From IMG/VR virus record IMGVR_UViG_3300022698_000267, positions 62,001 through 126,000 of that record: a stretch of 64,000 nt of DNA, one strand, 5' to 3'. Position 1 is the stretch's first letter. Each line of letters opens with the position of its first letter. Below are positions 47,514 to 64,000 of the stretch, piece after piece. Made by a program: the position numbers and the translations under genes. The notes beneath the pieces are model-generated. The model was not told the DNA's origin and searched no databases. It saw only the letters and a list, made by a program, of their open reading frames with translations.

Positions 47514-47537
47514 ATATTCCCCCTTAACTTGGTTCAT

Positions 47538-47566: not shown

Positions 47567-47596
47567 GAACTATTTGTATATTTTTTCATAAAATAC

Positions 47597-49622: not shown

Positions 49623-49674
49623 AAAACCTCCATTTTTATTAATATTTTAGTATATAAAAATATTCAAATAGTAC

Positions 49675-49703
49675 TTGACTTTTCACCTAATATACTATAT
49701 AAT
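49675..49703 (+). promoter_or_regulatory. Early sigma70-type promoter
   Basis: TTCAAATAGTAC-TTGACT-17-TATAAT. Confidence 0.88.
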
Positions 49704-49731
49704 GGTTTAAATTTAAAAGGGAGGTAGCAAA

Positions 49732-49860
49732 ATGGTCGACAAAGGTAAGGTCTGGTTGAGGTGTATGGAGTGTGGTAATAAGTTTTCACGATCACTTTCC
49801 AAAAGTCTTTACAATGTCAAATGTCCCAAATGTAAATCCTATGATGTGGAGGTGGACTGA
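49732..49860 (+). CDS. 42-aa zinc-ribbon protein (not in ORF track)
   Basis: CMECG...CPKCKS; SD GGGAGGT; first gene behind promoter 49675. Confidence 0.75.
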   Translation: MVDKGKVWLRCMECGNKFSRSLSKSLYNVKCPKCKSYDVEVD

Positions 49861-50076
49861 TGAGAGACCCAAATAGAACAGCATTTTTTATTTTGGACGA
49901 AAGAGAAGAACGTCGAGTTGCCAATCGGGGCATTGCCGCTAGAAACCGGGATTATCGAGAAACCCTCCGGCTTACCGGAGACCGGCGTGCTGCCACCAGA
50001 GCGTACTGTGCCGGTAACAAATGGCTCATGGAGAATGCACGAGCCTGTGGAAATCTTCCCTAACATCCCCTCCCCC

Positions 50077-50104
50077 TACGGGCTCCCGGAAACGGGGGTC
50101 CGTA
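50077..50104 (+). terminator. GC hairpin with GAAA tetraloop
   Basis: TACGGGCTCCCG-GAAA-CGGGGGTCCGTA. Confidence 0.65.
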
Positions 50105-50232
50105 CCCCTCTAAAGTACCTCTATTTTTCCTCATATGAACCTCATTCTATATGCTCTAAGACACAACGACGCATATTTTATCGTCTGTCTTTTCTTTCGC
50201 AAAATAAAGCAGAAATTTTCTTCAAATAATAC

Positions 50233-50261
50233 TTGACTTTTAGTTCAACACCTTATATAAT
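50233..50261 (+). promoter_or_regulatory. Early sigma70-type promoter
   Basis: TTGACT-17-TATAAT. Confidence 0.88.
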
Positions 50262-50288
50262 ATAGGAAATTTAAAAGGGAGGTAGTAA

Positions 50289-50498
50289 ATGGGAGATACA
50301 TCGTATCAGGAAAAAGATTTTGGTGATGAGGAAATATGGGCCAAATGTGAAACCTTGGAACAGTTTGAAGATTGGTGCATCGATGGTTTCTGGGAGGATC
50401 CAGAGGATTTTGAAAGTGATACTGGAATCACATTCGAGGATATCGAAGGCAGATGGTTCCAGTTTGTTCATGATCGGGTCTATATTAAGACAGATTAA
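50289..50498 (+). CDS. Highly acidic early protein
   Basis: 22 D/E vs 5 K/R in 69 aa; SD GGGAGGT. Confidence 0.75.
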   Translation: MGDTSYQEKDFGDEEIWAKCETLEQFEDWCIDGFWEDPEDFESDTGITFEDIEGRWFQFVHDRVYIKTD

Positions 50499-50985
50499 GG
50501 AGGATTAAATGCGACATCTCACAGCAAAAAACAAAGATAATTTTTTCTCTCGTTTGAAAGTTGGTGACAAGTTTACATCTTCTCCAGATGACTTTATTGG
50601 TAAAGATGTTCATCGACTTGCTAAACAGCAGGGCGTTCTGGTTCGGTATTTTCGGCCGGGAACACTAGAATACAAAGAATTTGGCTGCTTCACTTATCAA
50701 GTTACAAGTTACTTGTGTTCCTTGCAGAAACTTAAAGGGTTAACGGTGGATTGTGTACGTGGCATTCGTACTGATCAGAGAATTAAGAGTGGATTTTCAC
50801 CACAATACATTCTATTTACGGATGAGAAAACGTACATGGCATTGGAGGAACAAGATTATTATACTTATCATGATTGTAATTTCAATGCACGTTGCCTTCG
50901 AATAGAAGAAGATGAACGTATGTGGAAAATAATTAAGGAAGATTTGAAACGTTACCCGGAAGCAGACATCGATTAGAGGTTAACT

Positions 50986-51486
50986 ATGGATTATACCATT
51001 GGTCCTGTGAAAAAATGCGTGGGTTGTGGGTTCTGTTGCATGCAAGCACCATGTGCTGCTTCTGTCAGGCTTTACCCTGGAGCTAAGATTTGTCCTCAAC
51101 TTATCTGGGATGAAGCATTGGAGAGGTATTTATGTGGTCTTATGCAACTTCCTGGTTCGGTTGGCCTGGCTTACAAACAGGAGTTGTATGCGGGAGCTGG
51201 TTGCTGTAGCAACTTGAATTCTTGGAGAAGGAACGTAAAGAATAGACATCCAGTTGACAAGAAGGATAAGCTGTTAACTATAGATCCAATGTTTCAACTG
51301 TTTCTTAACTGCCTTGGACGTGAGTGGATAAGCAGTGATGTATTGGTATTAACAGTTTCGGCTTTCATGTTGAAATTAGTTAATCATATGGATATGACTG
51401 AAGATGAAGCACAGAGGTACGGTGAGCTGGTTACCCATTATATGAAAGATAATACACCAAGTTACCTGAAAGAATTTATGGGATAA
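50986..51486 (+). CDS. CxxCxxCC cysteine-cluster protein
   Basis: CVGCGFCC..APC, CPQL, CGL, GCC. Confidence 0.65.
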   Translation: MDYTIGPVKKCVGCGFCCMQAPCAASVRLYPGAKICPQLIWDEALERYLCGLMQLPGSVGLAYKQELYAGAGCCSNLNSWRRNVKNRHPVDKKDKLLTIDPMFQLFLNCLGREWISSDVLVLTVSAFMLKLVNHMDMTEDEAQRYGELVTHYMKDNTPSYLKEFMG

Positions 51487-51500
51487 TATTCAAAAAGTAC

Positions 51501-51529
51501 TTGACATTTTCAAATTTATACTATATAAT
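51501..51529 (+). promoter_or_regulatory. Early sigma70-type promoter
   Basis: TTGACA-17-TATAAT. Confidence 0.9.
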
Positions 51530-51584
51530 ATGAACAAGTGGTTGGGGATAGGGTAAATGTAAATTTTAGAAAAGGAGAAAGGCT

Positions 51585-51869
51585 ATGCTGTTAGATGAAT
51601 TGACTGCGTATTTCGATCTTAAAGCTCAGGCCGAAGAGATTAAGAAACAGATGACTGAGATTCGGGCGTCTATTCAATCTCAATTACCGGGAAATTCCAC
51701 CAAAACGTTGGTTCATACAGAGGATGGTTTAGTGACACTGCAGACGAGATCCCGTCTTAACAGAAAATGTAAGTGGGATGCTTTTGCAGTAGCAAACCCG
51801 GAACTTTACAACCAGGTGGTCACTGAATCTGAAACCACGTATTTCACCATTTCCAAAAAGCAACATTAA
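51585..51869 (+). CDS. Early hypothetical protein (coiled-coil N-terminus)
   Basis: SD AAGGAG; own promoter. Confidence 0.7.
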   Translation: MLLDELTAYFDLKAQAEEIKKQMTEIRASIQSQLPGNSTKTLVHTEDGLVTLQTRSRLNRKCKWDAFAVANPELYNQVVTESETTYFTISKKQH

Positions 51870-51881
51870 AAGGAAGGAGAT

Positions 51882-51899
51882 TAGGGGCTTCGGCCCCTA
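51882..51899 (+). terminator. GGGGC-TTCG-GCCCC hairpin (family also at 52890, 54104, 54865, 55303, 59266)
   Basis: cUUCGg or cUUCAg loop hairpins right after stop codons. Confidence 0.75.
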
Positions 51900-51927
51900 T
51901 TTCTATGTAAAAATATTCAAATAGTAC

Positions 51928-51956
51928 TTGACATTTTTATCAAATTCTGTTATACT
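51928..51956 (+). promoter_or_regulatory. Early sigma70-type promoter
   Basis: TTGACA-17-TATACT with extended -10 TG. Confidence 0.9.
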
Positions 51957-51999
51957 ATAGTTAATGGTTAAGGAGAAAGTTTTAAGAAGGAGATAACAG

Positions 52000-52347
52000 A
52001 TGGAACCAAATATGATTAATGTTGATGAAATTACTCCAACGGCAAAAGATGTCGAAAGAGCAGAAGGTCTTCGATGGCAGCGGAATACTTTCCATGGAGA
52101 TAATTCTCCGTTCAGGGGTCAGGCTGCTAAGATGGCGAAGTTAATCAGGGACCCAAAGAAGCTTGTGCGTAGAGCTAAGGCAGTCTATAACTTATATGGG
52201 TGCAATGATTATTTTGGCGACTTACCCCCTGGACAATGGATAGATCCGGAGTGGAAAGCAACGAAGGATGCTTGGAGACCATTTGCTAATGCTTTGAAGA
52301 AAATGGGATTCTCCTGGACGCAGATCAGGTCCATTTGCAATCGATAA
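52000..52347 (+). CDS. Early hypothetical protein
   Basis: SD AAGGAG; own promoter. Confidence 0.7.
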   Translation: MEPNMINVDEITPTAKDVERAEGLRWQRNTFHGDNSPFRGQAAKMAKLIRDPKKLVRRAKAVYNLYGCNDYFGDLPPGQWIDPEWKATKDAWRPFANALKKMGFSWTQIRSICNR

Positions 52348-52372
52348 TTTTTAAAAAATCTTCATAAAGTAC

Positions 52373-52401
52373 TTGACATTTTATTAAAATTTTGTTATAC
52401 T
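52373..52401 (+). promoter_or_regulatory. Early sigma70-type promoter
   Basis: TTGACA-17-TATACT with TG. Confidence 0.9.
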
Positions 52402-52455
52402 ACTTTTAAGTGGTTAGGGAAATTAAACGTTAATTTTAAAGAGGGAGGTAACAAA

Positions 52456-52884
52456 ATGGTTTTAAATGAAATGTCTGTTCAGGCCCTGAAGAAGTTCCAG
52501 GAGAAGAAAACCAGCAACAAAGATGTGGACAAGCGGTTTGAAGCAATGGGTGAGCTGGTCCAAGAATTGTCGGAGGTTTATGAGATTGCTTGTCCTCGGC
52601 TTCGTATGAAAGATATCGACGGTTCCTATTCCGGTGGGTCTACGTTCGATCCTGATGAGAATATCATCACCATGCGTGGAAAACTCTCCATTATAACCCT
52701 TCTTCATGAATTTGCTCATGCTTTGCTGCATTCTTCTGCACCGGATTTGCATGATACCAACCGCCGGGATTCAGAAGGGTTCTGCCGAATTTGGAGCGTT
52801 CTCCTTTTCAAAACCGTCTACCCCGAACAATTTGCCAAGCTTTACTATAATGGTGGAAGTTACATTCGCCAGAGAGCAGCTTAA
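52456..52884 (+). CDS. Zincin-like HExxH metallopeptidase domain protein
   Basis: TLLHEFAHAL and downstream E. Confidence 0.65.
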   Translation: MVLNEMSVQALKKFQEKKTSNKDVDKRFEAMGELVQELSEVYEIACPRLRMKDIDGSYSGGSTFDPDENIITMRGKLSIITLLHEFAHALLHSSAPDLHDTNRRDSEGFCRIWSVLLFKTVYPEQFAKLYYNGGSYIRQRAA

Positions 52885-52919
52885 CTTTATGGGGGCTTCG
52901 GCCCCCAATGGAGACAACA

Positions 52920-53573
52920 ATGCTACTGAATATTGATGAAGCAAGAAAAAAAGCGGCAAGTAAACTGTTGTCGTTGTCCTCTTTGAATGAATCCTTTACC
53001 TGTGATGTTTGTGGAGCCCCTTACAAAAGAAAGATTGCAGCCATTAAACATCTTTACAGGGAACATCCAGATGTGATACAACGACTTACTGAAACGGTGA
53101 TGCGAGAACATGCAGAACAACAAAGAGATAATTTTATTCGGGAACTTGCAATGCTTCCCTCTAGGGCCATTGAGAAGTATGAAAAAGACAAAAAAGATTT
53201 TATCGATAAGGTTAAAGATGATTACACCTTTATCTATTACGCTCGCCAGAGACTAGAAAAACTTATAAAGTTGGAAGCAACAGTTGCATTACACAAAGAA
53301 ACCTCCGAATTTATTCGAAATGCTCATTGTTCCTGGAGAGAATTGTTGGCAGATCTGGAGGCAGAGAGAGACAAAAAAATATATGAACTCATCATCTTTC
53401 CAGCGGAGCACAATTCCACTTCGGCGATCAGTAATGTTATAGAAATGTGGAGGTACAAAGCACAATGTAACTTCTACAAGAAAGATGTTTCCAGTGCAAT
53501 GGGAGATTACATTCATACTCTGAGAAAGATAATTGAAGCAGATTCCTTCTTAGCTTTCGCCCCTGTCCAATAA
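52920..53573 (+). CDS. C2H2 zinc-finger-containing protein
   Basis: FTCDVCGAPYKRKIAAIKHLYREH. Confidence 0.65.
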   Translation: MLLNIDEARKKAASKLLSLSSLNESFTCDVCGAPYKRKIAAIKHLYREHPDVIQRLTETVMREHAEQQRDNFIRELAMLPSRAIEKYEKDKKDFIDKVKDDYTFIYYARQRLEKLIKLEATVALHKETSEFIRNAHCSWRELLADLEAERDKKIYELIIFPAEHNSTSAISNVIEMWRYKAQCNFYKKDVSSAMGDYIHTLRKIIEADSFLAFAPVQ

Positions 53574-53590
53574 TAATCAGGAGGTAACAA

Positions 53591-56300
53591 ATGGATTTAA
53601 TAATTGAATTAGAAAGAAACGATGACTTTTCGATTAATGATTGGGGATCAGCTCAGTATTGTGGAGCCAAAGCATTTTTCGATTTACTCGATAAATATCG
53701 TAAAGATTCTTCTTTGGATGATTTGTTAGCGGAGTTTGGAATCGTTGTTGGTTATGACCATAAACTTCCGTTCGAACAAGTTAAGATGGAAATTCGTACG
53801 TCGTTTGATTTCGATGATCCCACAATTCAGGATATTCGTAATGCTGAGACCATTGAGGATATTTTCGAAGCTTTAAAGGATGCAAGTTGGGATCTTTGGT
53901 CGGCTGCTTCCTTCGTAGCACAACATTGTTTTCTTAACTTAACTGTAACTGGTGTTCCAACAGCACATAGTGTTGGTCCTGTTGGCAACCAAATGGTGCA
54001 ATCTGAAAATTATCTCACTGGTCTTTACTGTGCTCTTCTAGTCGAGTTTGAGTACGTAACTGATTCCAGTTGTTTCGCTAATTTCGATACCTAGAACTCA
54101 AGGATAGGGGCTTCAGCCCCTATTTCTATGTAAAAATATTCAAATAGTACTTGACAAATCCTCCAAATTCTGTTATACTATGTTTAAGTGGTTGGGAGAA
54201 CCTTTTACAGGAGGGTACTATGGAAGATTGGAAACTGGAGAAAATGATCGAGCTTTCAGACATTCTCGAGACACCTGATGGTTTTCGTCGGGAAGAGGAT
54301 TTTGGATGTGATAATTCTAAGAATCCTTGGATGTCGGAACCACCTTCGATCAAATTTTTTGCAGAAGATGGCAGTGTCGAGGTGTTTTTTCGTTTCGATT
54401 TCAGCGATTACGATAGAAAACAGGAGCTGACGATTTGTGGGACGACGAATTTCGTGATGCCGAATGGCAAGCGATTCACCTTCGATCGGCGCGGAATCAG
54501 CGATTCTTTTTATTTTGGCACACAATCGTACAATGAGCCGCTCAGTTCTGCTAATAAAATTTTGGCAGAGCAGATTGAATTGGCGCGGGATGGCATCATT
54601 CGCAGAGCAGACGCTGAAGACGTTCCTGGTCTTCAAGGTTTCAACATCACTCAGGAGAAGAAGAAGAGGATGACAGAGGAGTTGAAAGCGGGAAGAGTCG
54701 TTCAACTTGCCCCTGGAGGTATGGGAATTGGTTATCATCTTTCGAAACTGAAGAGCAATTTGAATCCTGGTCGATGGGGTGCTAGAAAGGCTGCTGACGC
54801 GATGGCAAAATTTTTCAATTGTACGACTCTCTGGATTGAGGAATTTGATCACGATTAAAATTTAAGGGGCTTCGGCCCCTATTTCTATGTAAAAATATTC
54901 AAAAAGTACTTGACAAAACGAACAAAATCTGTTATACTATATTTAAGTGGTTGGGGAGAACATTTAAATAGGGGGTACTAAAATGGGAGTTAATATCGAA
55001 GTTAAATTTACTGGTGAAAATGGTTTGGATTTGGTGGTACCAGTATCTGGTCCCGGCAATTGGAAGCTTCGTACCCAGACCGATTTTGGTTACGTGCTTC
55101 AAGGATACAATATGCACCGAGAACTTTTTATCCTTCTCAATGTTGACGATTGGAGAGTTAATATTGTTACCACCATTGTTGCCCACGGAGAGGGTATTTT
55201 CAGCAGAGGTGTAGACTTGGATCCCGAAGCAGATGATTTTGATGATAATTACTCCAATGTCGTGAATGAGATGCTCGCTAATTTGCCCTATGTTTAAGAT
55301 TAGGGCTTCAGCCCCATCTAAAGGAGGAGTAAACAGATGAGAGGAACCGTAAACGTTACCACAACTATTGGTTGGAGAGTAGTTGAGCACAAAAGTAAAG
55401 CTGGTGGGTTTGTTGGGTATATCGACGCAACTTACGATCGGTTGATTGAGCTTCTGGGTAAACCAAAGGGTTCCAATCCTTTTGGTAAAGTGAAAGCCGA
55501 GTGGGTTGTTCGTTTTACTACGGGAGACGAGTTTTACATTTACGATTTTAAAAGTAACAAAGAACCAGAGGATAGAACTTACTGGCATGTTGGTGGTAGT
55601 CGAAAGGCTGCTGAATGGTTTTTCAATAGTCTGGGAATTACAATGTATCGGGATCGATAAAATATTCAAATAGTACTTGACAAAACGAACAAAATCTGTT
55701 ATACTACATTTAAGAGGTTAGGGGAAAATACATAATAAAGGGAGGTAGCAAATGAGAAGAGAATGGAATGGAACGATGAACGTTGGAAATATGGAGCAGA
55801 AGATAATTTTCCTTACGGAGATGCAGGGTCAGTTGTCGGATGGTATGTGGGAGAATACAGAACCTTTTGACCATTGGCATCCGTGGTGTTCGTTGAATTG
55901 GGATACAGTCCACGTTGAACCCAATAACACAGGTGTAACCGGAAACCTTACTGCTGCTCGCAAACGGGGTTATCGATTTAACAGTACTGAGCTGTTGGAG
56001 ATTGTGGGCGAACGCATCATCGTCAAGATCAACCTGTGGAAGAAGCTTGGCGATAAATTCCTGGAGATTCTGGAAAAGAATCATTGGCTTATTCCGGATG
56101 ACGGCCGGCTTCCAACATCCAAAGATGAATATTGGACCAAGAAACGAGAAAAGTTGATCGAGCTTGGATTGACTGAAGAAGTAATGAGGGACGCCCTGGA
56201 AAATGGATCTTATACCATGAAGGATCTTCGAAATGACTGTGCTGCGTTAACTAAGGTTCTCAAAGCTAATGCAAAGGAACCTGCACAAGAAGCTGCTTAA
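53591..56300 (+). CDS. Early hypothetical genes (53591, 54220, 54983, 55337, 55752)
   Basis: Each with a strong SD; most behind their own promoter; ORF 54151 should start at ATG 54220. Confidence 0.65.
54151..54179 (+). promoter_or_regulatory. Early sigma70-type promoter
   Basis: TTGACA-17-TATACT with TG. Confidence 0.9.
54910..54938 (+). promoter_or_regulatory. Early sigma70-type promoter
   Basis: TTGACA-17-TATACT with TG. Confidence 0.9.
55677..55705 (+). promoter_or_regulatory. Early sigma70-type promoter
   Basis: TTGACA-17-TATACT with TG. Confidence 0.9.
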
Positions 56301-56376
56301 CCTCCCTCAAGGGGTGGCCTCCCCAGCCACCCCTCCTTCCTTCCACTTAAAAAATTCAAAAATATTCAAAAAGTAC

Positions 56377-56405
56377 TTGACAAAACGAACAAAATCTGTT
56401 ATACT
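56377..56405 (+). promoter_or_regulatory. Early sigma70-type promoter
   Basis: TTGACA-17-TATACT with TG. Confidence 0.9.
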
Positions 56406-56458
56406 ATATTTAAGTGGTTGGGGAGAGACCACAAATAAAATAAACGGGGGTAGAAATC

Positions 56459-57502
56459 ATGTGTTGGTTATATTTAAGGACGACGCAAAAAACAAGGCCA
56501 GTATCGAACCATTATTTAAGGAAGTTTTACAGTAAGGGTGGGGACCTTAACCCGGATGGTTGGGGAATCACCTCTTATATGGCAAAAGCCAAAGACTTCA
56601 CTCTGATGAAAGAGCCCACTAATGCTTCCGATAGCATGGTAGCCCATGCAGTTTCGGTTCAAAGTGGACTTCCAAAGACCAGAGCGGTCATTGCTCATGT
56701 TCGGAAAAAATCATGTGGCAAAGTTTCTTATCGGAATACACAGCCCATGTTGAAGAGAAGTGAAGTTACCGGAGAGATGTGGGCTTTTGCACATAATGGT
56801 AGTGCAACTCAGGAACAGATTGATGAGTTGAAAGAAGATGTAAAGGAAAATTGCTCTTACAAACCTGTTACACAGCTGGACAGTGAACTCCTTTTCATTG
56901 AATTTATGGATTGCATAGATAGGATAATGAAACCCAAAGATGAGAGTCGAGAAACCTTCAAGGTGATTCATGAATTTCTCAAAACCCTTAATGAGTATAC
57001 CAAAATGTGTGTGGTTGCTACAAACGGCGAGCTGTGCTTTGCTTACAGGGATATGAAGGGACAAAGATTCCTTCATTTACTCAAAGATAAGGTAGGCTAT
57101 GTAACCAGCACCCAACCACTTACCAGTGGTCCTTGGAAATCATTGTCACCTGGACAGATGTTGGTTTTTAAACGTGGAAAATTGATTTACAATAGCCATT
57201 ACAAACAAGATGCAGGAAAGAAGGTTGTTGCACAATCATCAAGGTCTGGTGGATATCAGTTATCTCCATACAAACAATCTTCTTACAAATATGATTTTGC
57301 CTTTCCCAAAGACGAGTATCTTATGGGTCGTGATAATTTTCATGATGAAGCAGAGGAGATGGGTCTTTGGGATGATTTGGATCAGGCAACCCGTTCCGAT
57401 GGGCGACGAGATTATGATGCCGTTCTGCTGGAAGATGGTCAGGATGGTCATTCGTTTACAACGATCGGTGAACATGTAGCAAATAAGTTTTCTGAATTCT
57501 AA
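56459..57502 (+). CDS. Class II glutamine amidotransferase (YafJ/EgtC-like Ntn hydrolase)
   Basis: N-terminal MC nucleophile, NPDGWG, AHVR, NTQP, FAHNG, DSE. Confidence 0.85.
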   Translation: MCWLYLRTTQKTRPVSNHYLRKFYSKGGDLNPDGWGITSYMAKAKDFTLMKEPTNASDSMVAHAVSVQSGLPKTRAVIAHVRKKSCGKVSYRNTQPMLKRSEVTGEMWAFAHNGSATQEQIDELKEDVKENCSYKPVTQLDSELLFIEFMDCIDRIMKPKDESRETFKVIHEFLKTLNEYTKMCVVATNGELCFAYRDMKGQRFLHLLKDKVGYVTSTQPLTSGPWKSLSPGQMLVFKRGKLIYNSHYKQDAGKKVVAQSSRSGGYQLSPYKQSSYKYDFAFPKDEYLMGRDNFHDEAEEMGLWDDLDQATRSDGRRDYDAVLLEDGQDGHSFTTIGEHVANKFSEF

Positions 57503-57600
57503 TCTAACCTCCCAACAACCCCCGACTGATGTAGCGGCTTCCCCCGGCCGCTACATCTATGTAATAACAGAAGATTTTTATATAATTATTCAAATAGTAC

Positions 57601-57629
57601 TTGACTTTTTAGTTCGTAGCCTATATAAT
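57601..57629 (+). promoter_or_regulatory. Early sigma70-type promoter
   Basis: TTGACT-17-TATAAT. Confidence 0.88.
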
Positions 57630-57675
57630 ACGTTTAAGTGGTTGGGGAAATGGATACGAAAAATTGGAGGTACTT

Positions 57676-57957
57676 ATGGAAGCAAATGAATTCGAAAGAG
57701 AGGAAATTTTAAATCAGGCTTACAACTTCGAGAAATTTGCAGTGAGGGATGGTGTGGTTGTTATTAAACATCCAGATGGTCGGATCCGGCTTACGGAAGA
57801 GGCTGGTCTTGGGCTTATACTTATTACTTCCTTTCCAGATGATGATACAGAGGGAGTTAAGACTTTTTGGATGAACATAAGCTCACTTCATGATTTGGGT
57901 AATAAATTGCGTGTTTCTGATCAAAGGAGAGTTTCACCAGATACAATTTGGATATAA
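57676..57957 (+). CDS. Early hypothetical protein, paralog of 62934..63236
   Basis: REEILN.A.NFEKFAV and FW.N.SS...LG.KLR shared. Confidence 0.7.
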   Translation: MEANEFEREEILNQAYNFEKFAVRDGVVVIKHPDGRIRLTEEAGLGLILITSFPDDDTEGVKTFWMNISSLHDLGNKLRVSDQRRVSPDTIWI

Positions 57958-58247
57958 TTTTTGGAGGATAATGTTATGGAAGCTTTAGAGATAGCTGATA
58001 AATGTGTTCGAATTGCAAAATCTTGTTGTCACAATGAACAAGTTGATGTTGCTAAGAATTTTTTTAATCGGGCTATCACAAAATTAGAGGCTAGTGATGT
58101 TCCGGGAAAGATGGAAGCTATAGACATCATAATCACAGCGTGGAATAAACTTTTGAATGATAGGGAACAGGGTGTCTTAGGTACTGGTTTCGAACATATT
58201 GATTCACAAACTATTTTAAATTAAGAACATTTTTCTTCAAATAGTAC

Positions 58248-58276
58248 TTGACTTTTTAGTTCGTAGCCTATATAAT
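58248..58276 (+). promoter_or_regulatory. Early sigma70-type promoter
   Basis: TTGACT-17-TATAAT, spacer identical to the 57601 copy. Confidence 0.88.
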
Positions 58277-58327
58277 ACAAATAAGAGGTTGAGGAATTAA
58301 GAACTTAAATTAAGAAAGGAGATAAAA

Positions 58328-59251
58328 ATGGAGGCAATGGAAACAAGTTTACAGACGATGAATGATGAATCAGTGAATCCTTTTTACGAAGTGGGTCGAT
58401 TCCCACTGGTGGCAAAAACTCGCACACCAGATGGACACTTTGGTCCCACCGTTGAGGCCGGATATGATCTTTTGGTCAATATGGAGGATCATTCCCCAGT
58501 CGGTCTTATCAGCCCTGGTTACAATCTGGTTACCAACAGGGAATTGGATGTGATGATTCAGGAGGCGACAGATGGAATTTCAATTCATTCCATTCAGGAT
58601 CATATGAATGCGAATGGAAGCGCCTGGATTCGGCGAATGATCTTCGATGCGGATAATATGACTTTTGATGTCACCGGCAACAATGACATTGTCAAGATCA
58701 TGCTGGAAATTTCCAATTCCTACAACGGACAGTCTTCCCTGGAAATGAACATGAAATTGTGGCGGAAGATTTGTGTCAATGGTTTAATGGGTTGGACTGA
58801 TTACCAACAACTTCGGTTCAAACATCTGGTGCAGGGAATTGTCGAAAGATTGAAAGATCTGTTTCGATTGAATGTGGATCGTGCAAGTGCTCAGGTAAAC
58901 GTTTGGAGCGATTGGGCCGAGATTACATTTCCACAGCAGATGTTCAATGATTTTATTGACATGCACAAAGTTCCGCTCACCGATGAAGAAGCAGAGACCA
59001 AATCACCGGTTCCCAGAATGTTGAGTGATCGACAGGCCGGATTCATCAAGGACCGTTACGAGCCGATCATGAACGAATATGGTGAGAACGAAACCAAATG
59101 GGGTGCGTACAACGTTCTTACGGCTATTGCAACCCATGATATCAAGACGCGCAAACCTGGGACCTCCCCTCTTTTTACTGCGGCATATGCAAGGATGGAG
59201 AAGTTGATTGGATCCTTCTACAATAACCAACCGGAAAATTTGCTTAACTAA
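58328..59251 (+). CDS. DUF932-like phage/plasmid protein
   Basis: Y.LVTN.E, NSYNGQSS, R.ICVNGL, TKWGAYN.LT..ATH. Confidence 0.75.
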   Translation: MEAMETSLQTMNDESVNPFYEVGRFPLVAKTRTPDGHFGPTVEAGYDLLVNMEDHSPVGLISPGYNLVTNRELDVMIQEATDGISIHSIQDHMNANGSAWIRRMIFDADNMTFDVTGNNDIVKIMLEISNSYNGQSSLEMNMKLWRKICVNGLMGWTDYQQLRFKHLVQGIVERLKDLFRLNVDRASAQVNVWSDWAEITFPQQMFNDFIDMHKVPLTDEEAETKSPVPRMLSDRQAGFIKDRYEPIMNEYGENETKWGAYNVLTAIATHDIKTRKPGTSPLFTAAYARMEKLIGSFYNNQPENLLN

Positions 59252-59298
59252 TAACCCACATAACTAGGGGGCTTCGGCCCCCTTGAAGGAGAGCAATC

Positions 59299-60018
59299 AT
59301 GTTAAACCATCTTATTTCAACAGAAGATAATTCTATTTCTATTTGGCGCCCAGACAATGGTCCTCATCTCATAAAAATCTTGACTTATGTGACTGAAGAA
59401 GGTCCCAGATATACATTCGAATACTTGGGACATTATTTTCCTGAAGATGGTTCAATTGTATGTCCCCGTACCTGGAATGAAAATTGTCCCATATGTGATT
59501 TCATTGAAATCAGTTGCAAAGGTTCTGGTATGGATTTTCTTGACTTTCGTTTTATACGAGCCAAGAAGCGGAGTCTCTACAATGTTGTTGTTTTGGATAC
59601 CAAGAAAGAAGAAAAACTTGGCGTTCAGATACTTGACATTTCAAGTTGGTTTGCAGAACGAAACCTTCTTGATCTTTTTAAAGAACTTATCCAAAGTGAA
59701 CCTCCTGAATTTGATTCACTCACTCCTGAATTAGAAGAAGTATACAATTACATTTCAGATTATGTTGCTTATACTTTAAAAGCAAAAGAAGTGGCTGACC
59801 CTATTCAAATTCTACAAGAAAATTATGTGCGGTTTTATGTTCGAGGAAAACGAACTTTTACTATGCAGATGGATCATTGGGGATTGGAACCTGATGAACG
59901 GAAATGCAAATGTAATGAACTTGTCCCTCATAACTTGGAGAATCTGTTGGTAAAATCAACGTTCGAAGAAGTTTATGCTAAACTCCGGAATTATTTCAAG
60001 AAAGATTGTAAATGTTAG
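59299..60018 (+). CDS. T4 gp32-like single-stranded DNA-binding core, divergent
   Basis: IWRP, HY...CPRTW.E.CPICD, K.R.LYNVVV, terminal KSTFEEV. Confidence 0.55.
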   Translation: MLNHLISTEDNSISIWRPDNGPHLIKILTYVTEEGPRYTFEYLGHYFPEDGSIVCPRTWNENCPICDFIEISCKGSGMDFLDFRFIRAKKRSLYNVVVLDTKKEEKLGVQILDISSWFAERNLLDLFKELIQSEPPEFDSLTPELEEVYNYISDYVAYTLKAKEVADPIQILQENYVRFYVRGKRTFTMQMDHWGLEPDERKCKCNELVPHNLENLLVKSTFEEVYAKLRNYFKKDCKC

Positions 60019-60037
60019 TAAAAAGTTCAAAAAGTAC

Positions 60038-60066
60038 TTGACAAATCCTTCAAATTCTGTTATACT
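60038..60066 (+). promoter_or_regulatory. Early sigma70-type promoter
   Basis: TTGACA-17-TATACT with TG. Confidence 0.9.
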
Positions 60067-60468
60067 ATGTTTAAGTGGTTGGGGAGAACATTTAAATAGG
60101 GGGAAGCAAAATGGGAGCAACGAATTTTTATTGTGAAGCAGTTGGAAAAACAGTGCAGGAAGCCTTTAATCGGGCCATCGAAGATGCGAGGCATGAGTAC
60201 GGTCATCGAAGCTATACTGGTTCGATTGCTGAAAAAGCAGGGCATGGCTTTCGAAAGGCTAATTTCCCAAAACGGCCGACCAAGAAGAATTTTGGCGATC
60301 AGGTCTATGAACTTTCAGACAAGTCGGACAAATATGGTCCGGCCCTTTATCATGAATTTACCGGCGTTATGCGTACCGAAGCCTGTCGTCGCCACGGCGT
60401 TAAAAAAGGTTCTCGGTCTAAGGTCTTTGCGTTCTTCGGTATAGCGTCTTGTTAAAGGGGGTCTAAAA

Positions 60469-60972
60469 ATGAAAAAGAAAATAACAACCAACATTTTTGT
60501 CTACGGAACATTGCGAAAGGGTTTTGGGAATAATAGGTTGCTGAAAGATTCCAGGTTCGTTGGAGATGCTGTTACGGTAAGAAGATATGGAATGTATGCA
60601 TCTGGAATCCCTTACGTTCATGAAGACGAAGCCTTTTGCACTGTAGTTGGAGAGGTTTACGAAGTTGACATTGATACTCTTCTGAAGCTGGACAGGTTGG
60701 AAGGACACCCGAATTTTTACCGGCGAAAGACTGTCGACGTTTGTTTGGCCACCGGCAATTCTATCCGAGCCGATATTTACTTCCATCAAGGAGGTGTTGG
60801 GGACCATATGCATAAAGTTGTAAATGGTGATTACAAATACCAGGAGAAAGAGGAGATTGAGAAAGTCTCTACACCTACGGTCTGGGAACCAAAAATTTGG
60901 ACATCGAAATCATACGTTTCACCAGTTAAGAAATCTCTTCTTGCAGCCTTCCGGGCTAGAGTATTTAATTAA
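60469..60972 (+). CDS. Gamma-glutamylcyclotransferase family protein
   Basis: FVYGTLRKG, P, V.GEVY.V, LDRLEG...Y.R. Confidence 0.9.
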   Translation: MKKKITTNIFVYGTLRKGFGNNRLLKDSRFVGDAVTVRRYGMYASGIPYVHEDEAFCTVVGEVYEVDIDTLLKLDRLEGHPNFYRRKTVDVCLATGNSIRADIYFHQGGVGDHMHKVVNGDYKYQEKEEIEKVSTPTVWEPKIWTSKSYVSPVKKSLLAAFRARVFN

Positions 60973-60991
60973 TAATTTCTTCAAATAGTAC

Positions 60992-61020
60992 TTGACAAAT
61001 CCTCCAAAATCTGTTATACT
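60992..61020 (+). promoter_or_regulatory. Early sigma70-type promoter
   Basis: TTGACA-17-TATACT with TG. Confidence 0.9.
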
Positions 61021-61061
61021 ATGTTTAAGTGGTTAGGGGAAATAGAATATAGGGGGAACAA

Positions 61062-62642
61062 ATGGGGACAAAGACGAGAAGTTACTTAGGGGTTGAGGGT
61101 CGTCACATGAAACCTACGCCCAGTCATCGTCCGGCGATTTGGGAATGTATGCTGGGCACGGTTTATGCATTGAACGATAAGGGTAAGGTTAGATATTTCG
61201 ATTTTGATTATGATGCAGCCAAAGAGTTTGCTGGAATTGATGAGAAACGGGATTTGAGAATCTGGAAGAATAAACGTTGGGTTCGTTGGGGTAATGGTGG
61301 TTCCTGCGAGCAGCCGAGAATGAACCAATTGGTTCTTTGGATCAAGGAGGCCGCATAATGTTCGATAAAGATGAGATTGAAGAATTGAATCGAAGATTTC
61401 CTCCTGAGATGACTGATGATCAATTCAAGGAATTGAGGCAAGAGATTATTGATGCCATAAACAGATTGAACTATCTGCAACGAATTCATTATCGAGAAGA
61501 AGGAAAATCTTATAAACCTTTCATATAATACTTGACAAAATCTTTAAAATCTGTTATAATGTATTTAGATTTGAGGAGGGAACATGAAAAATTCAGAGAA
61601 ACGAGATTTGGTCAGGCGTTTGATGCGAGTAAGTGTGTTTGAGAAATTTGATGGTCCTTATTCACATCACAATAGGGTTACAGCAAGGTTTCAAGAGAAT
61701 TCAGCCGTTGTGGTAACCAGAACCTTAGAAGCTTTATTTCCCAAGAATAAAGTTACTTGTCAACCCACCAGAGTTTGGGGAAGACTTTCTGTTCTTCGTC
61801 GGGTCACTATTTACATTCCAGTCAAGGAGTAACAAAATGAAACCAGGAATTTTTGGATGGTCTTATCCACCGGGGGTAACTTCGGTTCCCGGTGATTATG
61901 ATGAACCTTGTGAAGTTTGTGGTGGGATGCCTGATGATGATTGTATATGCCCTGAATGCCCTGAATGTGGGGCTTACGGCGATCCCTTTTGTTATGAAAA
62001 CCATGGTATGATAAAGACCCAAATGCAAAAGGATTATCTGGCGGTCAAAGAGAAAGAATGGGAAGAAGCTGCTAGGGCAATGGAAAAGGACATGGAAGAA
62101 GCCTATGGCGAAGCAGATTCTATCTTGGAGGAAGACTAATGCAAAGCCCCTACTATATTCAGAGAATGAAAAGAGTTGAAAACCCATCAGAGAACCCGTC
62201 TGTCGATGACCTTTATCGAATGGACTATATGGGTTCGGCAGAGTTTGAGTTTGGAGCTCTGCCCAAGTCATTGAAACGTATGACCAAAGTTTTCGATGAG
62301 CTTGTGGTTCAGATATCAGTAATCAAGGATTTCAAAAAGAAACCTCTTTACCTGCTTGGAACAGCAAAAAATGTTCATGAATATCAAAATTTTATTCCAG
62401 AATTGTTTTATGAAAAGATTCATTTGAAAGAAAGGCTGGAGCATACGTATGCTTGGAAAGGTAAAGGTGGTTATGGTATTACCAAGTATCCTTTCAAAGA
62501 GTTTTATCATCCAACGGCCTGGTGGGACATTGACAATGATGTGATGTTCACTTTCGGAAAGAAGCACGCTGAAAATTTGCGAAAAGCTATTGGTGTCGTT
62601 CGGGACAAGAAGATGGCACAAGGGAAATCCGAATGGTACTAA
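61062..62642 (+). CDS. Early hypothetical genes (61062, 61358, 61584, 61837, 62139)
   Basis: SD sites and promoter cassettes; 61837 is Cys-rich and acidic; 62139 has DYMGSAEFEFGALP. Confidence 0.65.
61532..61560 (+). promoter_or_regulatory. Early sigma70-type promoter
   Basis: TTGACA-17-TATAAT with TG. Confidence 0.9.
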
Positions 62643-62753
62643 TTGTATTTCTTCAACACCTCCCCCCCAACACCTTTCTCATGAGAGGTGAGGTCCCCTC
62701 CCTCACCTCTCCCTACCTATCACATAAATTATTCTGAAAAGTTCAAATAGTAC

Positions 62754-62782
62754 TTGACATTTCTATCAAATTCTGTTATACT
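62754..62782 (+). promoter_or_regulatory. Early sigma70-type promoter
   Basis: TTGACA-17-TATACT with TG. Confidence 0.9.
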
Positions 62783-62826
62783 ATGTTTAAGTGGTTAGGG
62801 GAAATAGAATAAAGGGGGGATAGCAA

Positions 62827-62934
62827 ATGATGAATGAAGCCGAATATGATTTTTACATGGAAGCACAGAGACAGGCGTGGGAAGTAGAGCAAGAGCTGGA
62901 AAAAGAAGAAGCGGAAGAGGAGGTGATAGAATAA
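62827..62934 (+). CDS. 35-aa very acidic peptide (not in ORF track)
   Basis: MMNEAEYDFYMEAQRQAWEVEQELEKEEAEEEVIE; first ORF behind promoter 62754; TAATG overlap with next gene. Confidence 0.7.
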   Translation: MMNEAEYDFYMEAQRQAWEVEQELEKEEAEEEVIE

Positions 62935-63236
62935 TGGAAATGGCTTTCGAATGGCAGCGGGAAGAGATTTTGAATAAGGCTAACAATTTTGAGAAGTTTG
63001 CAGTAAAGGGAAAGACAGTCACTCTTATCTGTTCGGATTGTACAATTGTCCTTCAAGTTGGAGTTGTACAAAGGGTGGAATTGGTTTTTGTTTACTACTT
63101 CCCAAAGGCTGCAGATGAGAAACCTTTGGAATTTTGGATCAATAAATCGTCTATGTCACAGTTGGGTGATAAGCTTCGAAGTTCTGCTTTTAAACGGGTC
63201 CCATGGACTGAAGTTCCAGTACTGAAGTTCCAGTAA
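62934..63236 (+). CDS. Early hypothetical protein, paralog of 57676..57957
   Basis: Start moved to ATG 62934 (SD GGAGGT). Confidence 0.7.
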   Translation: MEMAFEWQREEILNKANNFEKFAVKGKTVTLICSDCTIVLQVGVVQRVELVFVYYFPKAADEKPLEFWINKSSMSQLGDKLRSSAFKRVPWTEVPVLKFQ

Positions 63237-63300: not shown

Positions 63301-64000
63301 ATGGGAAAGAGTAGGTTAAAACCCAAGGTTAAGAAAGAAATTGCAGTTGTTCCACATTCTCGTGTGGATCCTAAGAAGGGAGTTGAAGAAGTTGAAGGAC
63401 ATCAACGTAGTATGGATGTTAATGCTGCTGTTTCTGATGTACATAAATCGAAGGAAAATGCAGCAAATCCTGATAGACAAAGACGAGAGTTTGTGGATGA
63501 TATGAATCAGAAGTTTTCTGAGATGAATAGTAGGGAAGAAACACATGATGACTTTAGAAAAAAGACTGGACAAAGAGAACAAGCAAAGCGTCTTACCAGT
63601 GAAGAAATAGGAACTATTGATAAGTACACAGAGGAAGTTGGATTCAATGAAAAGTTGCGAAAGTCTATCAAGGATGGACATACCAATGATCCAGACGTAA
63701 AGCTTCTGGATTCTGTGGTTTCTAAAGCAGAACCACTAGCAAATGATACGTTAGTAGTTAGAGGATCCAGAAGAGATTTTCATAAAACCATTGGTAGAGA
63801 GTTGAAAGTTGGTGAAGTCATCACAGACCATGGATTTATGTCTACCACTACACAACCGGATGTAGCTTCTAATTTCATGTGGAAGCAGAATAAAGATACC
63901 GGAAAGATCAAGATGGGAACCTTCTATCAAATAAGTTTGCCGAAAGGAACGAAAGCATTTCCTATAAATGCTAAGGAGCATGAATATCTTCTTTCCAGAA
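63301..64000 (+). CDS. ADP-ribosyltransferase, R-S-E (VIP2/C3/Alt-like) class; truncated by window end, not in ORF track
   Basis: Manual translation: KYT...N.KLR, LVVRG, GFMSTT, I.LPKG.KA, KEHEYLLSR. Confidence 0.88.
   Translation, partial: MGKSRLKPKVKKEIAVVPHSRVDPKKGVEEVEGHQRSMDVNAAVSDVHKSKENAANPDRQRREFVDDMNQKFSEMNSREETHDDFRKKTGQREQAKRLTSEEIGTIDKYTEEVGFNEKLRKSIKDGHTNDPDVKLLDSVVSKAEPLANDTLVVRGSRRDFHKTIGRELKVGEVITDHGFMSTTTQPDVASNFMWKQNKDTGKIKMGTFYQISLPKGTKAFPINAKEHEYLLSR

What the first reader, a model, noticed from the sequence alone, without database searches (positions are those of the whole stretch)
49660..62810. Array of repeated hairpin-promoter-leader cassettes each driving 1-3 unrelated small genes
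Seen: 15 copies in 13 kb (17 from 43.9 kb) of TTCAAAWAGTAC-TTGACW-17-TATAMT, often preceded by GGGGCTTCRGCCCCTATTTCTATGTAAAAATA (51884, 54107, 54866); subfamilies share identical spacers (54910/55677/56377; 57601/58248). Known: similar promoter-stem-loop repeats in T4-type phages mediate shuffling of early gene modules, and SPO1 has a multi-promoter host-takeover module. Inference: a recombinogenic, integron-like cassette array of host-takeover and anti-defence genes that also titrates host RNAP.
Basis: partly seen in the sequence, partly recalled or inferred. Interest (0 to 1): 0.75.

Follow-up and report, generated by a model that had tools for sequence, protein, structure and literature searches.

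The report
Phage early-promoter cassette array
This is the start of a 51-kb block of about 41 near-perfect host-type promoters in an uncultivated 274-kb phage, each switching on one to three small, mostly unknown genes at infection; related phages carry the same promoter-bounded units in scrambled order, as already described for T4-like phages.

Summary
TTGACW-N17-TATAMT occurs 17 times in the window against 0.27 expected. Fifteen copies lie on the + strand at 49675-62754, each preceded by TTCAAAWAGTAC.

The window is part of a 273,563-bp virus record. The array is larger than reported: 41 such promoters, all on the + strand, span about 51 kb.

Each unit has an A-rich upstream element, a consensus -35 and a consensus -10. 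Where the -10 is TATACT, an extended TGn always accompanies it. Many units carry a GGTTGGGG box 10 nt after the -10, then a strong ribosome-binding site and 1-3 genes. About half of the units end in a stable hairpin. Twenty-two of the 28 cargo genes match no protein family.

I read this as the immediate-early region, transcribed by host RNA polymerase, and as a counterpart of T4 PeSL cassettes and the SPO1 host-takeover module.

Relatives (protein identity 49-67%) share the promoter and box but not the gene order. Adjacency breaks at promoter-bearing junctions. One indel is bounded by direct promoter repeats. Promoters are mosaic and cluster by genome.

"Recombinogenic cassettes" is therefore supported. 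"Integron-like" is not: there is no integrase or attC, and every cassette has its own promoter. Anti-defence cargo and RNAP titration remain untested.

Dense promoter arrays also occur in unrelated metagenomic phages. Moderate interest.

The parts
43866..43894 (+). First consensus promoter of the array (TTGACT-17-TATAAT). It lacks the TTCAAAWAGTAC box and drives 43948-44217, 44244-44702 and the sigma-like gene 44723-45754.
47538..47625 (.). Back-to-back divergent promoters: the only minus-strand consensus copy (47566-47538) and a degenerate + strand copy (47597-47625, -10 TATATT, preceded by TTCATAAAATAC).
49663..50104 (+). Cassette 1. Promoter 49663-49703. Genes 49732-49860 (42 aa, zinc ribbon) and 49860-50063 (67 aa). 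Hairpin 50077-50104 (-22.9 kcal/mol).
50221..51486 (+). Cassette 2. Promoter 50221-50261. Genes 50289-50498 (69 aa), 50509-50976 (155 aa) and 50986-51486 (166 aa). No hairpin; the stop codon lies inside the next promoter's upstream element.
51489..51899 (+). Cassette 3. Promoter 51489-51529. Leader box GGTTGGGG at 51540. Gene 51585-51869 (94 aa, one of three paralogs, resembles the C-terminus of RecE-like PHROG 434). Hairpin 51882-51899.
51916..52347 (+). Cassette 4. Promoter 51916-51956 (TGn + TATACT). Gene 52000-52347 (115 aa). The whole cassette is absent at the syntenic place in relative L092.
52361..54122 (+). Cassette 5. Promoter 52361-52401. Gene 52456-52884 (142 aa, HEFAH motif). Internal hairpin 52891-52906. 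Genes 52908-53573 (221 aa) and 53591-54094 (167 aa). Hairpin 54105-54122. The two distal genes are absent in L092.
54139..54880 (+). Cassette 6. Promoter 54139-54179. Gene 54220-54858 (212 aa). Hairpin 54865-54880.
54898..55660 (+). Cassette 7. Promoter 54898-54938. It is mosaic: the 5' part matches P4/P6, the spacer matches P8/P9, and the leader matches P12. Gene 54983-55297 (104 aa), internal hairpin 55303-55315, gene 55337-55660 (107 aa).
55665..56334 (+). Cassette 8. Promoter 55665-55705. Gene 55752-56300 (182 aa; 63-64% identical homologs in L091 and L095, at other positions). Hairpin 56310-56334 (-18.2 kcal/mol).
56365..57557 (+). Cassette 9. Promoter 56365-56405; 69 bp are 100% identical to the cassette 7 promoter. 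Gene 56459-57502 (347 aa, class-II glutamine amidotransferase-like, GATase_4). Hairpin 57528-57557 (-21.7 kcal/mol).
57589..58224 (+). Cassette 10. Promoter 57589-57629. Genes 57676-57957 (93 aa, paralog of 62934-63236) and 57976-58224 (82 aa).
58236..60018 (+). Cassette 11. Promoter 58236-58276. Gene 58328-59251 (307 aa, DUF932). Internal hairpin 59267-59282. Gene 59299-60018 (239 aa, gp32-like ssDNA-binding fold as a lead only). The gene pair is conserved in L091 and L092; the second gene is absent in L095.
60026..60972 (+). Cassette 12. Promoter 60026-60066. Genes 60111-60455 (114 aa) and 60469-60972 (167 aa, gamma-glutamyl cyclotransferase-like, one of three paralogs).
60980..61528 (+). 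Cassette 13. Promoter 60980-61020. Genes 61062-61358 (98 aa) and 61358-61528 (56 aa).
61520..62711 (+). Cassette 14. Promoter 61520-61560 (its upstream element overlaps the end of the preceding gene). Genes 61584-61832 (82 aa), 61837-62139 (100 aa) and 62139-62642 (167 aa). Hairpin 62683-62711 (-20.2 kcal/mol).
62742..63236 (+). Cassette 15. Promoter 62742-62782. Conserved 35-aa mini-ORF 62827-62934 and gene 62934-63236 (100 aa). No hairpin or promoter precedes the next gene.
63301..64000 (+). ADP-ribosyltransferase gene (330 aa in the identical locus L099; it runs off the window). It is probably co-transcribed with cassette 15.
44723..45754 (+). Phage sigma-like protein with region 2 only. 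No region 4 was found anywhere in the genome. It lies behind the first consensus promoter and is a candidate middle/late sigma factor.
48169..49080 (+). ADP-ribosylglycohydrolase gene flanking the array.

Best explanation
The region is the first quarter of the immediate-early transcription block of an uncultivated jumbo phage (273.6 kb) that is not T4-like.

Promoter function (inferred from sequence). About 41 near-consensus promoters of the housekeeping-sigma type are read by the host RNA polymerase as soon as the DNA enters the cell. Each has an A-tract/TTCAAAWAGTAC element that resembles an UP element, then TTGACW, a 17-bp spacer and TATAAT. When the -10 is the weaker TATACT, a compensating TGn is present.

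Leader (inferred). Most transcripts begin with an unstructured purine-rich leader. It carries a GGTTGGGG box at a fixed distance from the -10. I think this box helps promoter escape from very tight promoters, or protects the 5' end of the mRNA as an SD-like stabiliser.

Genes and insulation. A strong Shine-Dalgarno site follows, then 1-3 small genes. Stable hairpins, often GGGGCTTCGGCCCC, insulate roughly half of the units. Further along the array, beyond the window, tRNA genes sit directly before five of the promoters.

Evolution (shown by comparison with relatives). The 60-120-bp promoter and hairpin repeats are all in the same orientation, so they act as portable homology. Homologous recombination between them deletes, duplicates, swaps and homogenises cassettes; the phage encodes a RecA-family recombinase that could do this. 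The block therefore behaves as a hyperplastic nursery of accessory early genes, as PeSL cassettes do in T4-like phages.
For: Promoters are real and of the host type.
- Enrichment is 17 against 0.27 expected.
- 41 of the 43 genome-wide copies sit on one strand within 51 kb.
- The spacing is exactly 17 bp.
- All 13 TATACT promoters carry TGn, against 1 of 28 TATAAT promoters (p = 8e-10).
- The only sigma-like gene lacks region 4 and itself sits behind a promoter of this same class.
- The upstream TTTCAAAAAGTAC-type element recurs in arrays of unrelated phage contigs, which points to host RNAP rather than a lineage-specific factor.

Leader box.
- It is present in 51 of 90 promoters across five phages.
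- It lies 10 nt after the -10 in 44 of 51 cases, and 16-37 nt from the start codon.
- The leaders are unstructured.
- The box is conserved in relatives whose spacers have diverged.

Hairpins.
- Folding energies are -13 to -23 kcal/mol, with z-scores of -2.6 to -6.8.
- GGGGCTTCGGCCCC-type hairpins occur 9 times, all on the + strand and all inside the array.

Shuffling.
- Relatives found through the DUF932 protein (49-67% identity) carry the same cassettes in a different order.
- Junctions with a promoter: 7 conserved, 33 broken. Junctions without one: 27 conserved, 8 broken.
- Counting independent loci only: 1/14 against 8/3, Fisher p = 8e-4.
- L095 has an extra cassette lying between two direct promoter repeats of about 100 bp, where L092 has a single promoter.
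- The deletion of the 233-aa gene in L095 ends inside the hairpin that follows DUF932.
- Promoter 7 is a three-way mosaic of P4/P6, P9 and P12.
- 69 bp are 100% identical between P7 and P9.
- With the hexamers masked, a promoter's nearest neighbour lies in the same genome for 58 of 89, against 23 expected and at most 37 in 1000 shuffles.
- A RecA-family gene is present.

Cargo. 22 of 28 proteins are orphans, as in the T4 hyperplastic regions (PMC2839356).
Against: - There is no transcription data, and the host is unknown. The best bacterial hits to a phage histidine kinase are only about 35% identical.
- No reads show excision circles or structural variants. One wetland run held only fragments. 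Two other samples carry 100% identical copies.
- The closest relatives are only 50-80% identical, so crossover points cannot be placed to the base.
- Breakpoints at promoter junctions would also be expected if selection simply forbids breaks inside operons.
- Only about half of the promoters have a hairpin.
- Complementarity of the leader box to the anti-SD is modest: -6.7 kcal/mol, against -11.0 for true SD sites, and 7% of random 16-mers reach it.
Confidence: 0.7

Rival explanations
1. The promoters resemble each other only because each was selected independently for maximal strength. Cassettes move by illegitimate recombination (moron accretion), and junctions with promoters are merely the places where breaks are tolerated. 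The repeats do not themselves mediate exchange.
For: Unrelated phages converge on the same upstream element, -35 and -10. Breaks inside operons would be selected against, which alone could give the association seen. Two other samples carry 100% identical copies, so no ongoing rearrangement is seen.
Against: Selection for strength does not explain several observations. The 17-bp spacers are identical and 69 bp are 100% identical between P7 and P9. Each genome has its own variants at non-consensus positions, and promoters cluster by genome. An orthologous junction in L092 carries the L092-type spacer. Promoter 7 is a three-way mosaic. One indel is bounded by direct promoter repeats.
Confidence: 0.2
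2. The array is an integron-like system in which a site-specific recombinase captures and excises cassettes at the repeats.
For: Cassette-like organisation of unrelated small genes, all in one orientation.
Against: The genome, estimated 97% complete, has no tyrosine integrase. The repeats are direct promoter sequences, not imperfect inverted attC sites. Each cassette has its own promoter rather than sharing one Pc.
Confidence: 0.03
3. The promoters are read by the phage's own sigma-like protein (44723-45754) or by a virion-carried factor, so they are not immediate-early host-RNAP promoters.
For: A sigma70 region-2 protein is encoded just upstream of the array. The TAC immediately before the -35 and the leader box go beyond the standard sigma70 elements.
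Against: The consensus is exactly the housekeeping TTGACA-17-TATAAT with TGn compensation. The phage sigma lacks region 4, which is the part that reads a -35. Its own gene sits behind a promoter of the same class. Unrelated phages use the same motif.
Confidence: 0.07
4. The main selected function of the array is as a decoy that soaks up host RNA polymerase, and the cargo matters little.
For: About 41 near-consensus promoters per genome copy. T4 early promoters are known to out-compete host promoters (PMC2988021).
Against: Many cargo proteins are conserved at 40-80% identity across relatives, so the genes themselves are under selection. Nothing here measures RNAP occupancy.
Confidence: 0.1

Closest known systems
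PeSL (promoter-early stem-loop) cassettes in hyperplastic regions of T4-like phages (Arbiol et al. 2010, PMC2839356; Comeau et al. 2014, PMC4122927)
   Same: Strong sigma70-like early promoters with an AT-rich upstream region and an adjacent GGGG...CCCC stem-loop. Conservation extends over about 100 bp. The cassettes flank orphan genes. Indels and replacements between relatives occur at the elements, and one endpoint here lies in a hairpin, as reported for RB49.
   Different: The phage lineage is unrelated: family-A DNA polymerase fused to UDG, GyrB, and at best 25% identity to the polymerase of any isolate. The array is one contiguous 51-kb block. Only about half of the promoters have a hairpin. 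There is an extra conserved transcribed box (GGTTGGGG). tRNA genes are embedded in the array. Mini-circles could not be looked for.
SPO1 host-takeover module (about 24-26 small early genes with multiple sigmaA promoters; the 26-gene cluster is mentioned in the abstract of PMC6873191, the rest is from my own knowledge)
   Same: A cluster of small early genes driven by many strong host-sigma promoters with conserved flanks. A phage-encoded sigma then drives the later classes.
   Different: No protein homology to SPO1 genes was detected with PHROGs. The array sits in the middle of the record, not at an identified terminal redundancy. It is about four times larger.
T4 early 'uber' promoters (UP/-35/TGn/-10) with Alt and ModA ADP-ribosylation of the RNAP alpha subunit (PMC2988021)
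   Same: The promoters combine an UP-like element, -35, TGn and -10, plus further consensus positions. About 40 occur per genome. An ADP-ribosyltransferase gene sits inside the early block (63301 onwards) and shows weak similarity to PHROG 832, 'RNA polymerase ADP-ribosylase'.
   Different: The target of the ADP-ribosyltransferase is unknown. The host is unknown. No MotA/AsiA-type system was looked for.
Integrons
   Same: A one-directional array of unrelated small gene cassettes separated by repeats.
   Different: No integrase, no attC sites seen by eye in the cassette junctions, and every cassette has its own promoter.
Morons of lambdoid phages
   Same: Self-contained promoter-gene-terminator units carrying accessory genes.
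   Different: Morons are scattered and lack shared flanking homology. Here the flanks are repeated and show concerted evolution.

Membership tests
PeSL-type promoter/terminator cassettes | Near-consensus sigma70-type early promoter (-35, about 17 bp, -10) | tested here: met
   17 against 0.27 expected in the window; 41 in the block; 17-bp spacing throughout. This rests on sequence only; activity was not measured.
PeSL-type promoter/terminator cassettes | [quoted passage not shown] | tested here: met
   Conserved aAAAAAa.TTCAAAtAgTAC upstream of the -35.
PeSL-type promoter/terminator cassettes | Adjacent GC-rich stem-loop (GGGG...CCCC) able to terminate upstream transcription | tested here: inconclusive
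   Present and very stable at 7 of the 15 promoters in the window and 17 of 41 overall. The remaining promoters have none. Termination itself was not assayed.
PeSL-type promoter/terminator cassettes | Located in a hyperplastic region rich in orphan, non-core genes | tested here: met
   22 of 28 cargo proteins have no Pfam or PHROG family. Gene content and order vary between relatives.
PeSL-type promoter/terminator cassettes | Indels and replacements between related phages bounded by the elements | tested here: met
   Adjacency breaks are concentrated at promoter junctions. An extra cassette lies between direct promoter repeats in L095 compared with L092. One endpoint falls in a hairpin. Resolution is limited because the relatives are only 50-80% identical.
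PeSL-type promoter/terminator cassettes | Excised cassette mini-circles | not testable with these tools
   No usable reads. One run held only three short contigs of a relative.
Integron | IntI tyrosine recombinase next to the array | tested here: not met
   PF00589 finds nothing in the 273.6-kb record, while it is found in all 14 control genomes.
Integron | Promoterless cassettes ending in attC inverted repeats and expressed from one Pc | tested here: not met
   Each cassette has its own consensus promoter. The repeats are direct repeats.
SPO1-type host-takeover module | Cluster of small early genes behind multiple host-sigma promoters | tested here: met
   15 promoters and 28 genes in 13 kb.
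SPO1-type host-takeover module | Homology to SPO1 gp37-gp60, or placement in the terminal redundancy of a Herelleviridae genome | tested here: not met
   PHROGs give no match to SPO1-type takeover proteins; the one takeover-category hit is a gamma-glutamyl cyclotransferase. The core genes are not herellevirus-like. The array sits mid-record and no end repeats are recorded.

The most novel reading that the evidence does not exclude
The GGTTGGGG box sits at about +3 to +13 of most early transcripts and is conserved across at least four related phages at a fixed distance from the -10. It may be a previously undescribed early-mRNA control element. It could be a handle for coordinated stabilisation, or for shut-off of the whole early regulon by a ribosome, nuclease or phage RNA-binding protein. 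Alternatively it could be an operator for a phage repressor. Either reading goes beyond its being a favourable initial transcribed sequence.
Probability: 0.25. Interest if true: 0.6.

Novelty: new member of a known kind. Interest (0 to 1): 0.4.

Why it matters
It extends the idea that repeated promoter/terminator cassettes drive modular shuffling of early accessory genes. That idea rests on experiments in T4-like phages only. Here the same pattern appears in an unrelated, uncultivated jumbo-phage lineage, and the same scan shows that dense consensus-promoter arrays are common in metagenomic phages.

In practical terms, the 41 promoters mark out the early regulon of a phage that has no cultured host. 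They point to about 100 small early proteins (28 in the window) as candidates for host-takeover or counter-defence screens. They also supply a natural set of strong promoter, leader and terminator parts.

Tried and rejected
- Megablast of the 14-kb array against GenBank phages found no match.
- The search for related loci with single cargo proteins (GATase-like, DUF932) in IMG/VR found no relatives. The genome search 'relatives' is not available for virus records.
- The exact-motif scan of IMG/VR returned promoter arrays of unrelated phages, not relatives. tblastx found no shared cargo.
- Reads gave nothing useful. No run was listed for a 6-kb stretch. The one wetland DNA run held three short contigs about 95% identical, with no joints. 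Copies from two other samples are 100% identical, so no population variants were seen.
- I tested whether C-rich 3' UTR tracts pair with the G-rich leader box to link the two mRNA ends. There are too few complementary sites, so I rejected this.
- No Rfam family matches in 43-64 kb at E <= 0.1. The leaders have no significant fold.
- I tested whether the amber-suppressor tRNA signals stop-codon recoding. Reading TAG as sense gives no specific gain in ORF coverage.
- Host identification through the phage histidine kinase gave only about 35% identity, to Bryobacterales and other phyla, which is inconclusive.
- The Atlas search for the 182-aa protein gave no lead. PDB sequence searches added nothing beyond the Pfam results.

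Full report
**Observation.**
The pattern TTGACW-N16-18-TATAMT matches 17 times in the 64-kb window, against 0.27 +/- 0.51 in dinucleotide-preserving shuffles. Fifteen matches are on the + strand between 49675 and 62754. Each is directly preceded by TTCAAAWAGTAC with 0-2 mismatches. The repeat finder groups them into families of 64-113 nt. It recovers the hairpin-plus-promoter unit at 51883, 54106 and 54865. Reading the sequence together with the ORF list gives 28 + strand genes with strong Shine-Dalgarno sites, 1-3 behind each promoter.

**Extent of the array.**
The window is bases 62001-126000 of a 273,563-bp IMG/VR virus record, estimated 97% complete. Across that genome the strict promoter pattern occurs 42 times on the + strand and once on the - strand. 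Forty-one of the + strand copies lie between 105.8 and 156.7 kb. The finding is thus the first quarter of a block of about 51 kb. Beyond the window the block also holds 19 tRNA genes. Five promoters there directly follow a tRNA 3' end (tRNA coordinates).

**What kind of phage this is.**
The phage is not T4-like. It encodes a family-A DNA polymerase fused to UDG, GyrB, an NAD-dependent ligase, helicases and a 1290-aa hybrid histidine kinase. The polymerase is at most 25% identical to that of any isolated phage. Fragments of relatives come from wetland and marine metagenomes. The host could not be determined.

**Anatomy of a unit.**
Aligning the 41 copies gives this consensus: aAAAAAa.TTCAAAtAgTAC-TTGACA-N17-TATAaT-A.attTAAGtGGTTGGGGAAA.

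- Two promoter classes exist. One is TTGACT...TATAAT. The other is TTGACA...TGTTATACT.
- All 13 TATACT promoters carry the extended -10 TGn, against 1 of 28 TATAAT promoters (p = 8e-10). This is the compensation expected for housekeeping-sigma promoters.
- The box GGTTGGGG (at most one mismatch) occurs in 51 of 90 promoters across this phage and its relatives. It lies 10 nt after the -10 in 44 of 51 cases but 16-37 nt from the start codon. It is therefore tied to the transcription start, not to translation initiation.
- The leaders are unstructured and match no Rfam family.
- Complementarity of the box to the anti-SD is intermediate: -6.7 kcal/mol, against -11.0 for the true SD sites and -2.4 for random 16-mers.
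- Stable hairpins of -13 to -23 kcal/mol close cassettes 1, 3, 5, 6, 8, 9 and 14, and also sit inside cassettes 5, 7 and 11.
- The GGGGCTTCGGCCCC type occurs nine times in the genome, all on the + strand and all within the block.
- Only 17 of 41 promoters have an upstream hairpin of -10 kcal/mol or stronger, and 32% of random positions in the array reach the same threshold. So 'hairpin-promoter' describes a subset.

**Who reads the promoters.**
The consensus is that of the primary sigma factor. The phage's only sigma-like protein (44723-45754) has region 2. No region 4 is found anywhere in the genome. That gene itself lies behind a promoter of the same class. The scan of IMG/VR for the 18-nt motif mostly hit unrelated phage contigs (no shared proteins). 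These nonetheless carry complete promoters with similar TTTCAAAAAGTAC-like upstream elements, often in dense one-directional arrays. Twenty-five of 82 loci hold at least five strict promoters, and density reaches 2.6 per kb. This points to a generic, UP-element-like contact with host RNA polymerase. It also shows that such arrays are common. By analogy with T4 'uber' early promoters (PMC2988021), I infer immediate-early transcription by the host enzyme. This step is inferred, not shown.

**Cargo.**
Pfam and PHROGs leave 22 of the 28 proteins without a family. The exceptions are:

- a zinc-ribbon peptide (49732-49860);
- a 94-aa protein resembling the C-terminus of RecE-like PHROG 434, with three paralogs in the block;
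- a class-II glutamine-amidotransferase-like protein (56459-57502);
- a DUF932 protein (58328-59251);
- a 114-aa protein (60111-60455) with a short match to an unnamed PHROG family;
- a gamma-glutamyl cyclotransferase-like protein (60469-60972).

In addition, the 239-aa partner of DUF932, which has no family hit, looks like a gp32-type ssDNA-binding protein by Atlas structure (TM 0.64-0.69), which is a lead only.

An ADP-ribosylglycohydrolase gene (48169-49080) and an ADP-ribosyltransferase gene (63301 onwards; weak match to 'RNA polymerase ADP-ribosylase') flank the window part of the array. 'Host takeover and anti-defence' is plausible for such a region but is not demonstrated.

**Test of shuffling.**
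The DUF932 protein has homologs at 67, 58, 57 and 49% identity. Their contigs (L091, L092/L093, L095, L096) are one-directional arrays of small genes. They have the same upstream element, promoter and leader box. The gene order is scrambled.

- L092 begins collinear with window genes 50986, 51585, 52456 and 54220. It lacks cassette 4 and the two distal genes of cassette 5. It then interleaves homologs of genes that lie 20-40 kb further along in this genome.
- Within-cassette pairs stay together, for example DUF932 with the 239-aa gene, and the 35-aa mini-ORF with its partner.
- Over all pairwise comparisons, junctions bearing a promoter are conserved 7 times and broken 33 times. Junctions without a promoter are conserved 27 times and broken 8 times.
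- Counting each independent relative once against this genome gives 1/14 against 8/3 (Fisher p = 8e-4).
- At the DNA level, one promoter of L092 (6456) aligns to two direct promoter repeats of about 100 bp in L095 (855 and 1367). These two repeats enclose an extra two-gene cassette.
- The 233-aa gene missing from L095 has one deletion endpoint in the hairpin that follows DUF932.

Within this genome the promoters are mosaic. P7 shares its hairpin-to-(-35) part with P4 and P6. It shares its spacer with P8 and P9, and 69 bp are 100% identical to P9. It shares its leader, up to the third codon, with P12.

With the two hexamers masked, a promoter's nearest neighbour lies in the same genome for 58 of 89 promoters. 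Label shuffling gives 23 on average and at most 37. At the one orthologous junction conserved with L092, the L092 promoter carries the L092-type spacer. These are signs of concerted evolution, that is, repeated exchange between copies. A RecA-family recombinase is encoded at genome 212866-214020.

**What is not supported.**

- No tyrosine integrase exists in the genome. The repeats are direct promoter sequences and each cassette has its own promoter. The integron analogy therefore holds only at the level of 'cassettes in a row'.
- No reads could be used to look for circles or variants. Copies from two other samples are identical.
- Titration of RNA polymerase remains conjecture.
- The enrichment of breakpoints at promoters would partly arise from selection against breaking operons. 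The argument for repeat-mediated exchange therefore rests on the mosaic promoters, the concerted evolution and the repeat-bounded indel.

**Comparison with known systems.**
The closest described system is the PeSL cassette of T4-like phages. PeSLs combine a strong sigma70-like promoter, an AT-rich region and a GGGG...CCCC stem-loop. They are conserved over about 100 bp and flank orphan genes in hyperplastic regions. They mediate indels and form mini-circles (PMC2839356, PMC4122927). Here the promoter, the AT-rich element, the orphan-rich setting and the element-bounded rearrangements were tested and met. The stem-loop is present in only about half of the units. Mini-circles could not be tested.

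The SPO1 host-takeover module is analogous in logic, but neither homology nor placement matches. I therefore class this as a new member of a known kind of architecture, found in an unrelated jumbo-phage lineage. Its extra features are the conserved transcribed box and the embedded tRNA genes.

**Verdict.**
This is a real feature with a correct core interpretation, and it is larger than reported. It is mechanistically ordinary for phage early regions. Interest is moderate (0.4). The part most likely to hold something new is the leader box.

Noticed in passing
L106:1867-1944 (genome 127867-127944, about 1.9 kb beyond the window end): A tRNA with anticodon CUA (amber suppressor, called 'Pyl' by ARAGORN) sits in the early block, with a consensus promoter about 20 nt after its 3' end. 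Reading TAG as sense gives no specific gain in ORF coverage, so genome-wide recoding is not indicated.
   Followed up: partly
L106 (genome 127.8-143.0 kb): Nineteen tRNA genes are embedded in the promoter array. Five are followed within about 20 nt by the next promoter, so they sit where other cassettes have a hairpin. A relative shows the same arrangement (L093, about 4150-4220).
   Followed up: partly
L101:140-4012 (genome 158139-162011): A 1290-aa phage-encoded hybrid histidine kinase (MASE3, several PAS domains, HisKA, HATPase, receiver) lies directly after the array. Its best bacterial matches are about 35% identical (Bryobacterales and others). A contig carrying a distant DUF932 homolog (L098) also carries PAS/histidine-kinase genes.
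   Followed up: partly
window 1571-2581, 48169-49080 and 63301-64000: A toolkit for NAD+/ADP-ribose conflicts: an ARPP-1/ARPP-2 protein, an ADP-ribosylglycohydrolase and an ADP-ribosyltransferase. cpYpsA-domain genes occur in the arrays of relatives (L092, L096).
   Followed up: no
L091:8245-8553 and L095:7104-7391; homolog at genome 128466-129077 (L106:2466-3077): Early-array genes with a ribosomal protein L7/L12 domain hit, on record for the relatives.
   Followed up: no
L083, L013, L010/L070, L077, L053 (IMG/VR contigs): Unrelated phage contigs carry even denser one-directional arrays of consensus promoters, up to 2.6 per kb. In L013 most promoters are preceded by a recurring CGTCTAA motif (in one case TTAGACGATAATCGTCTAA, a possible hairpin). 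The architecture looks widespread and little described outside T4-like phages.
   Followed up: partly
window 62827-62934: A 35-aa acidic mini-ORF directly after the promoter is conserved in relatives (L092:6532-6639, L095:1437-1532). In L092 it is followed by a different second gene, which places a breakpoint inside a cassette.
   Followed up: partly
window 57676-57957 vs 62934-63236; 51585-51869 and two copies beyond the window; 60469-60972 and two copies beyond the window: There are paralog families within the array: 43% identity (E = 2e-19) for the first pair, three copies of the 94-aa family, and three gamma-glutamyl cyclotransferase-like genes. This indicates cassette duplication.
   Followed up: partly
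window 50000-64000 vs 30000-50000: G+C is higher in the array (0.39-0.42) than in the preceding 20 kb (0.32-0.37).
   Followed up: no
window 50060-50076, 56300-56309, 57505-57523, 62654-62676: C-rich, G-free tracts (such as ACCTCCC... and CCTCCCCCCCAACACC) precede or flank the large hairpins that lack a T-run. They may be Rho-utilisation-like or 3'-end elements. Pairing with the leader box was tested and rejected.
   Followed up: partly
window 49077-49622 (-): The only clear minus-strand gene next to the array (181 aa; PHROG 420, with a weak polynucleotide-kinase-like match). It is convergent with the ADP-ribosylglycohydrolase gene.
   Followed up: no
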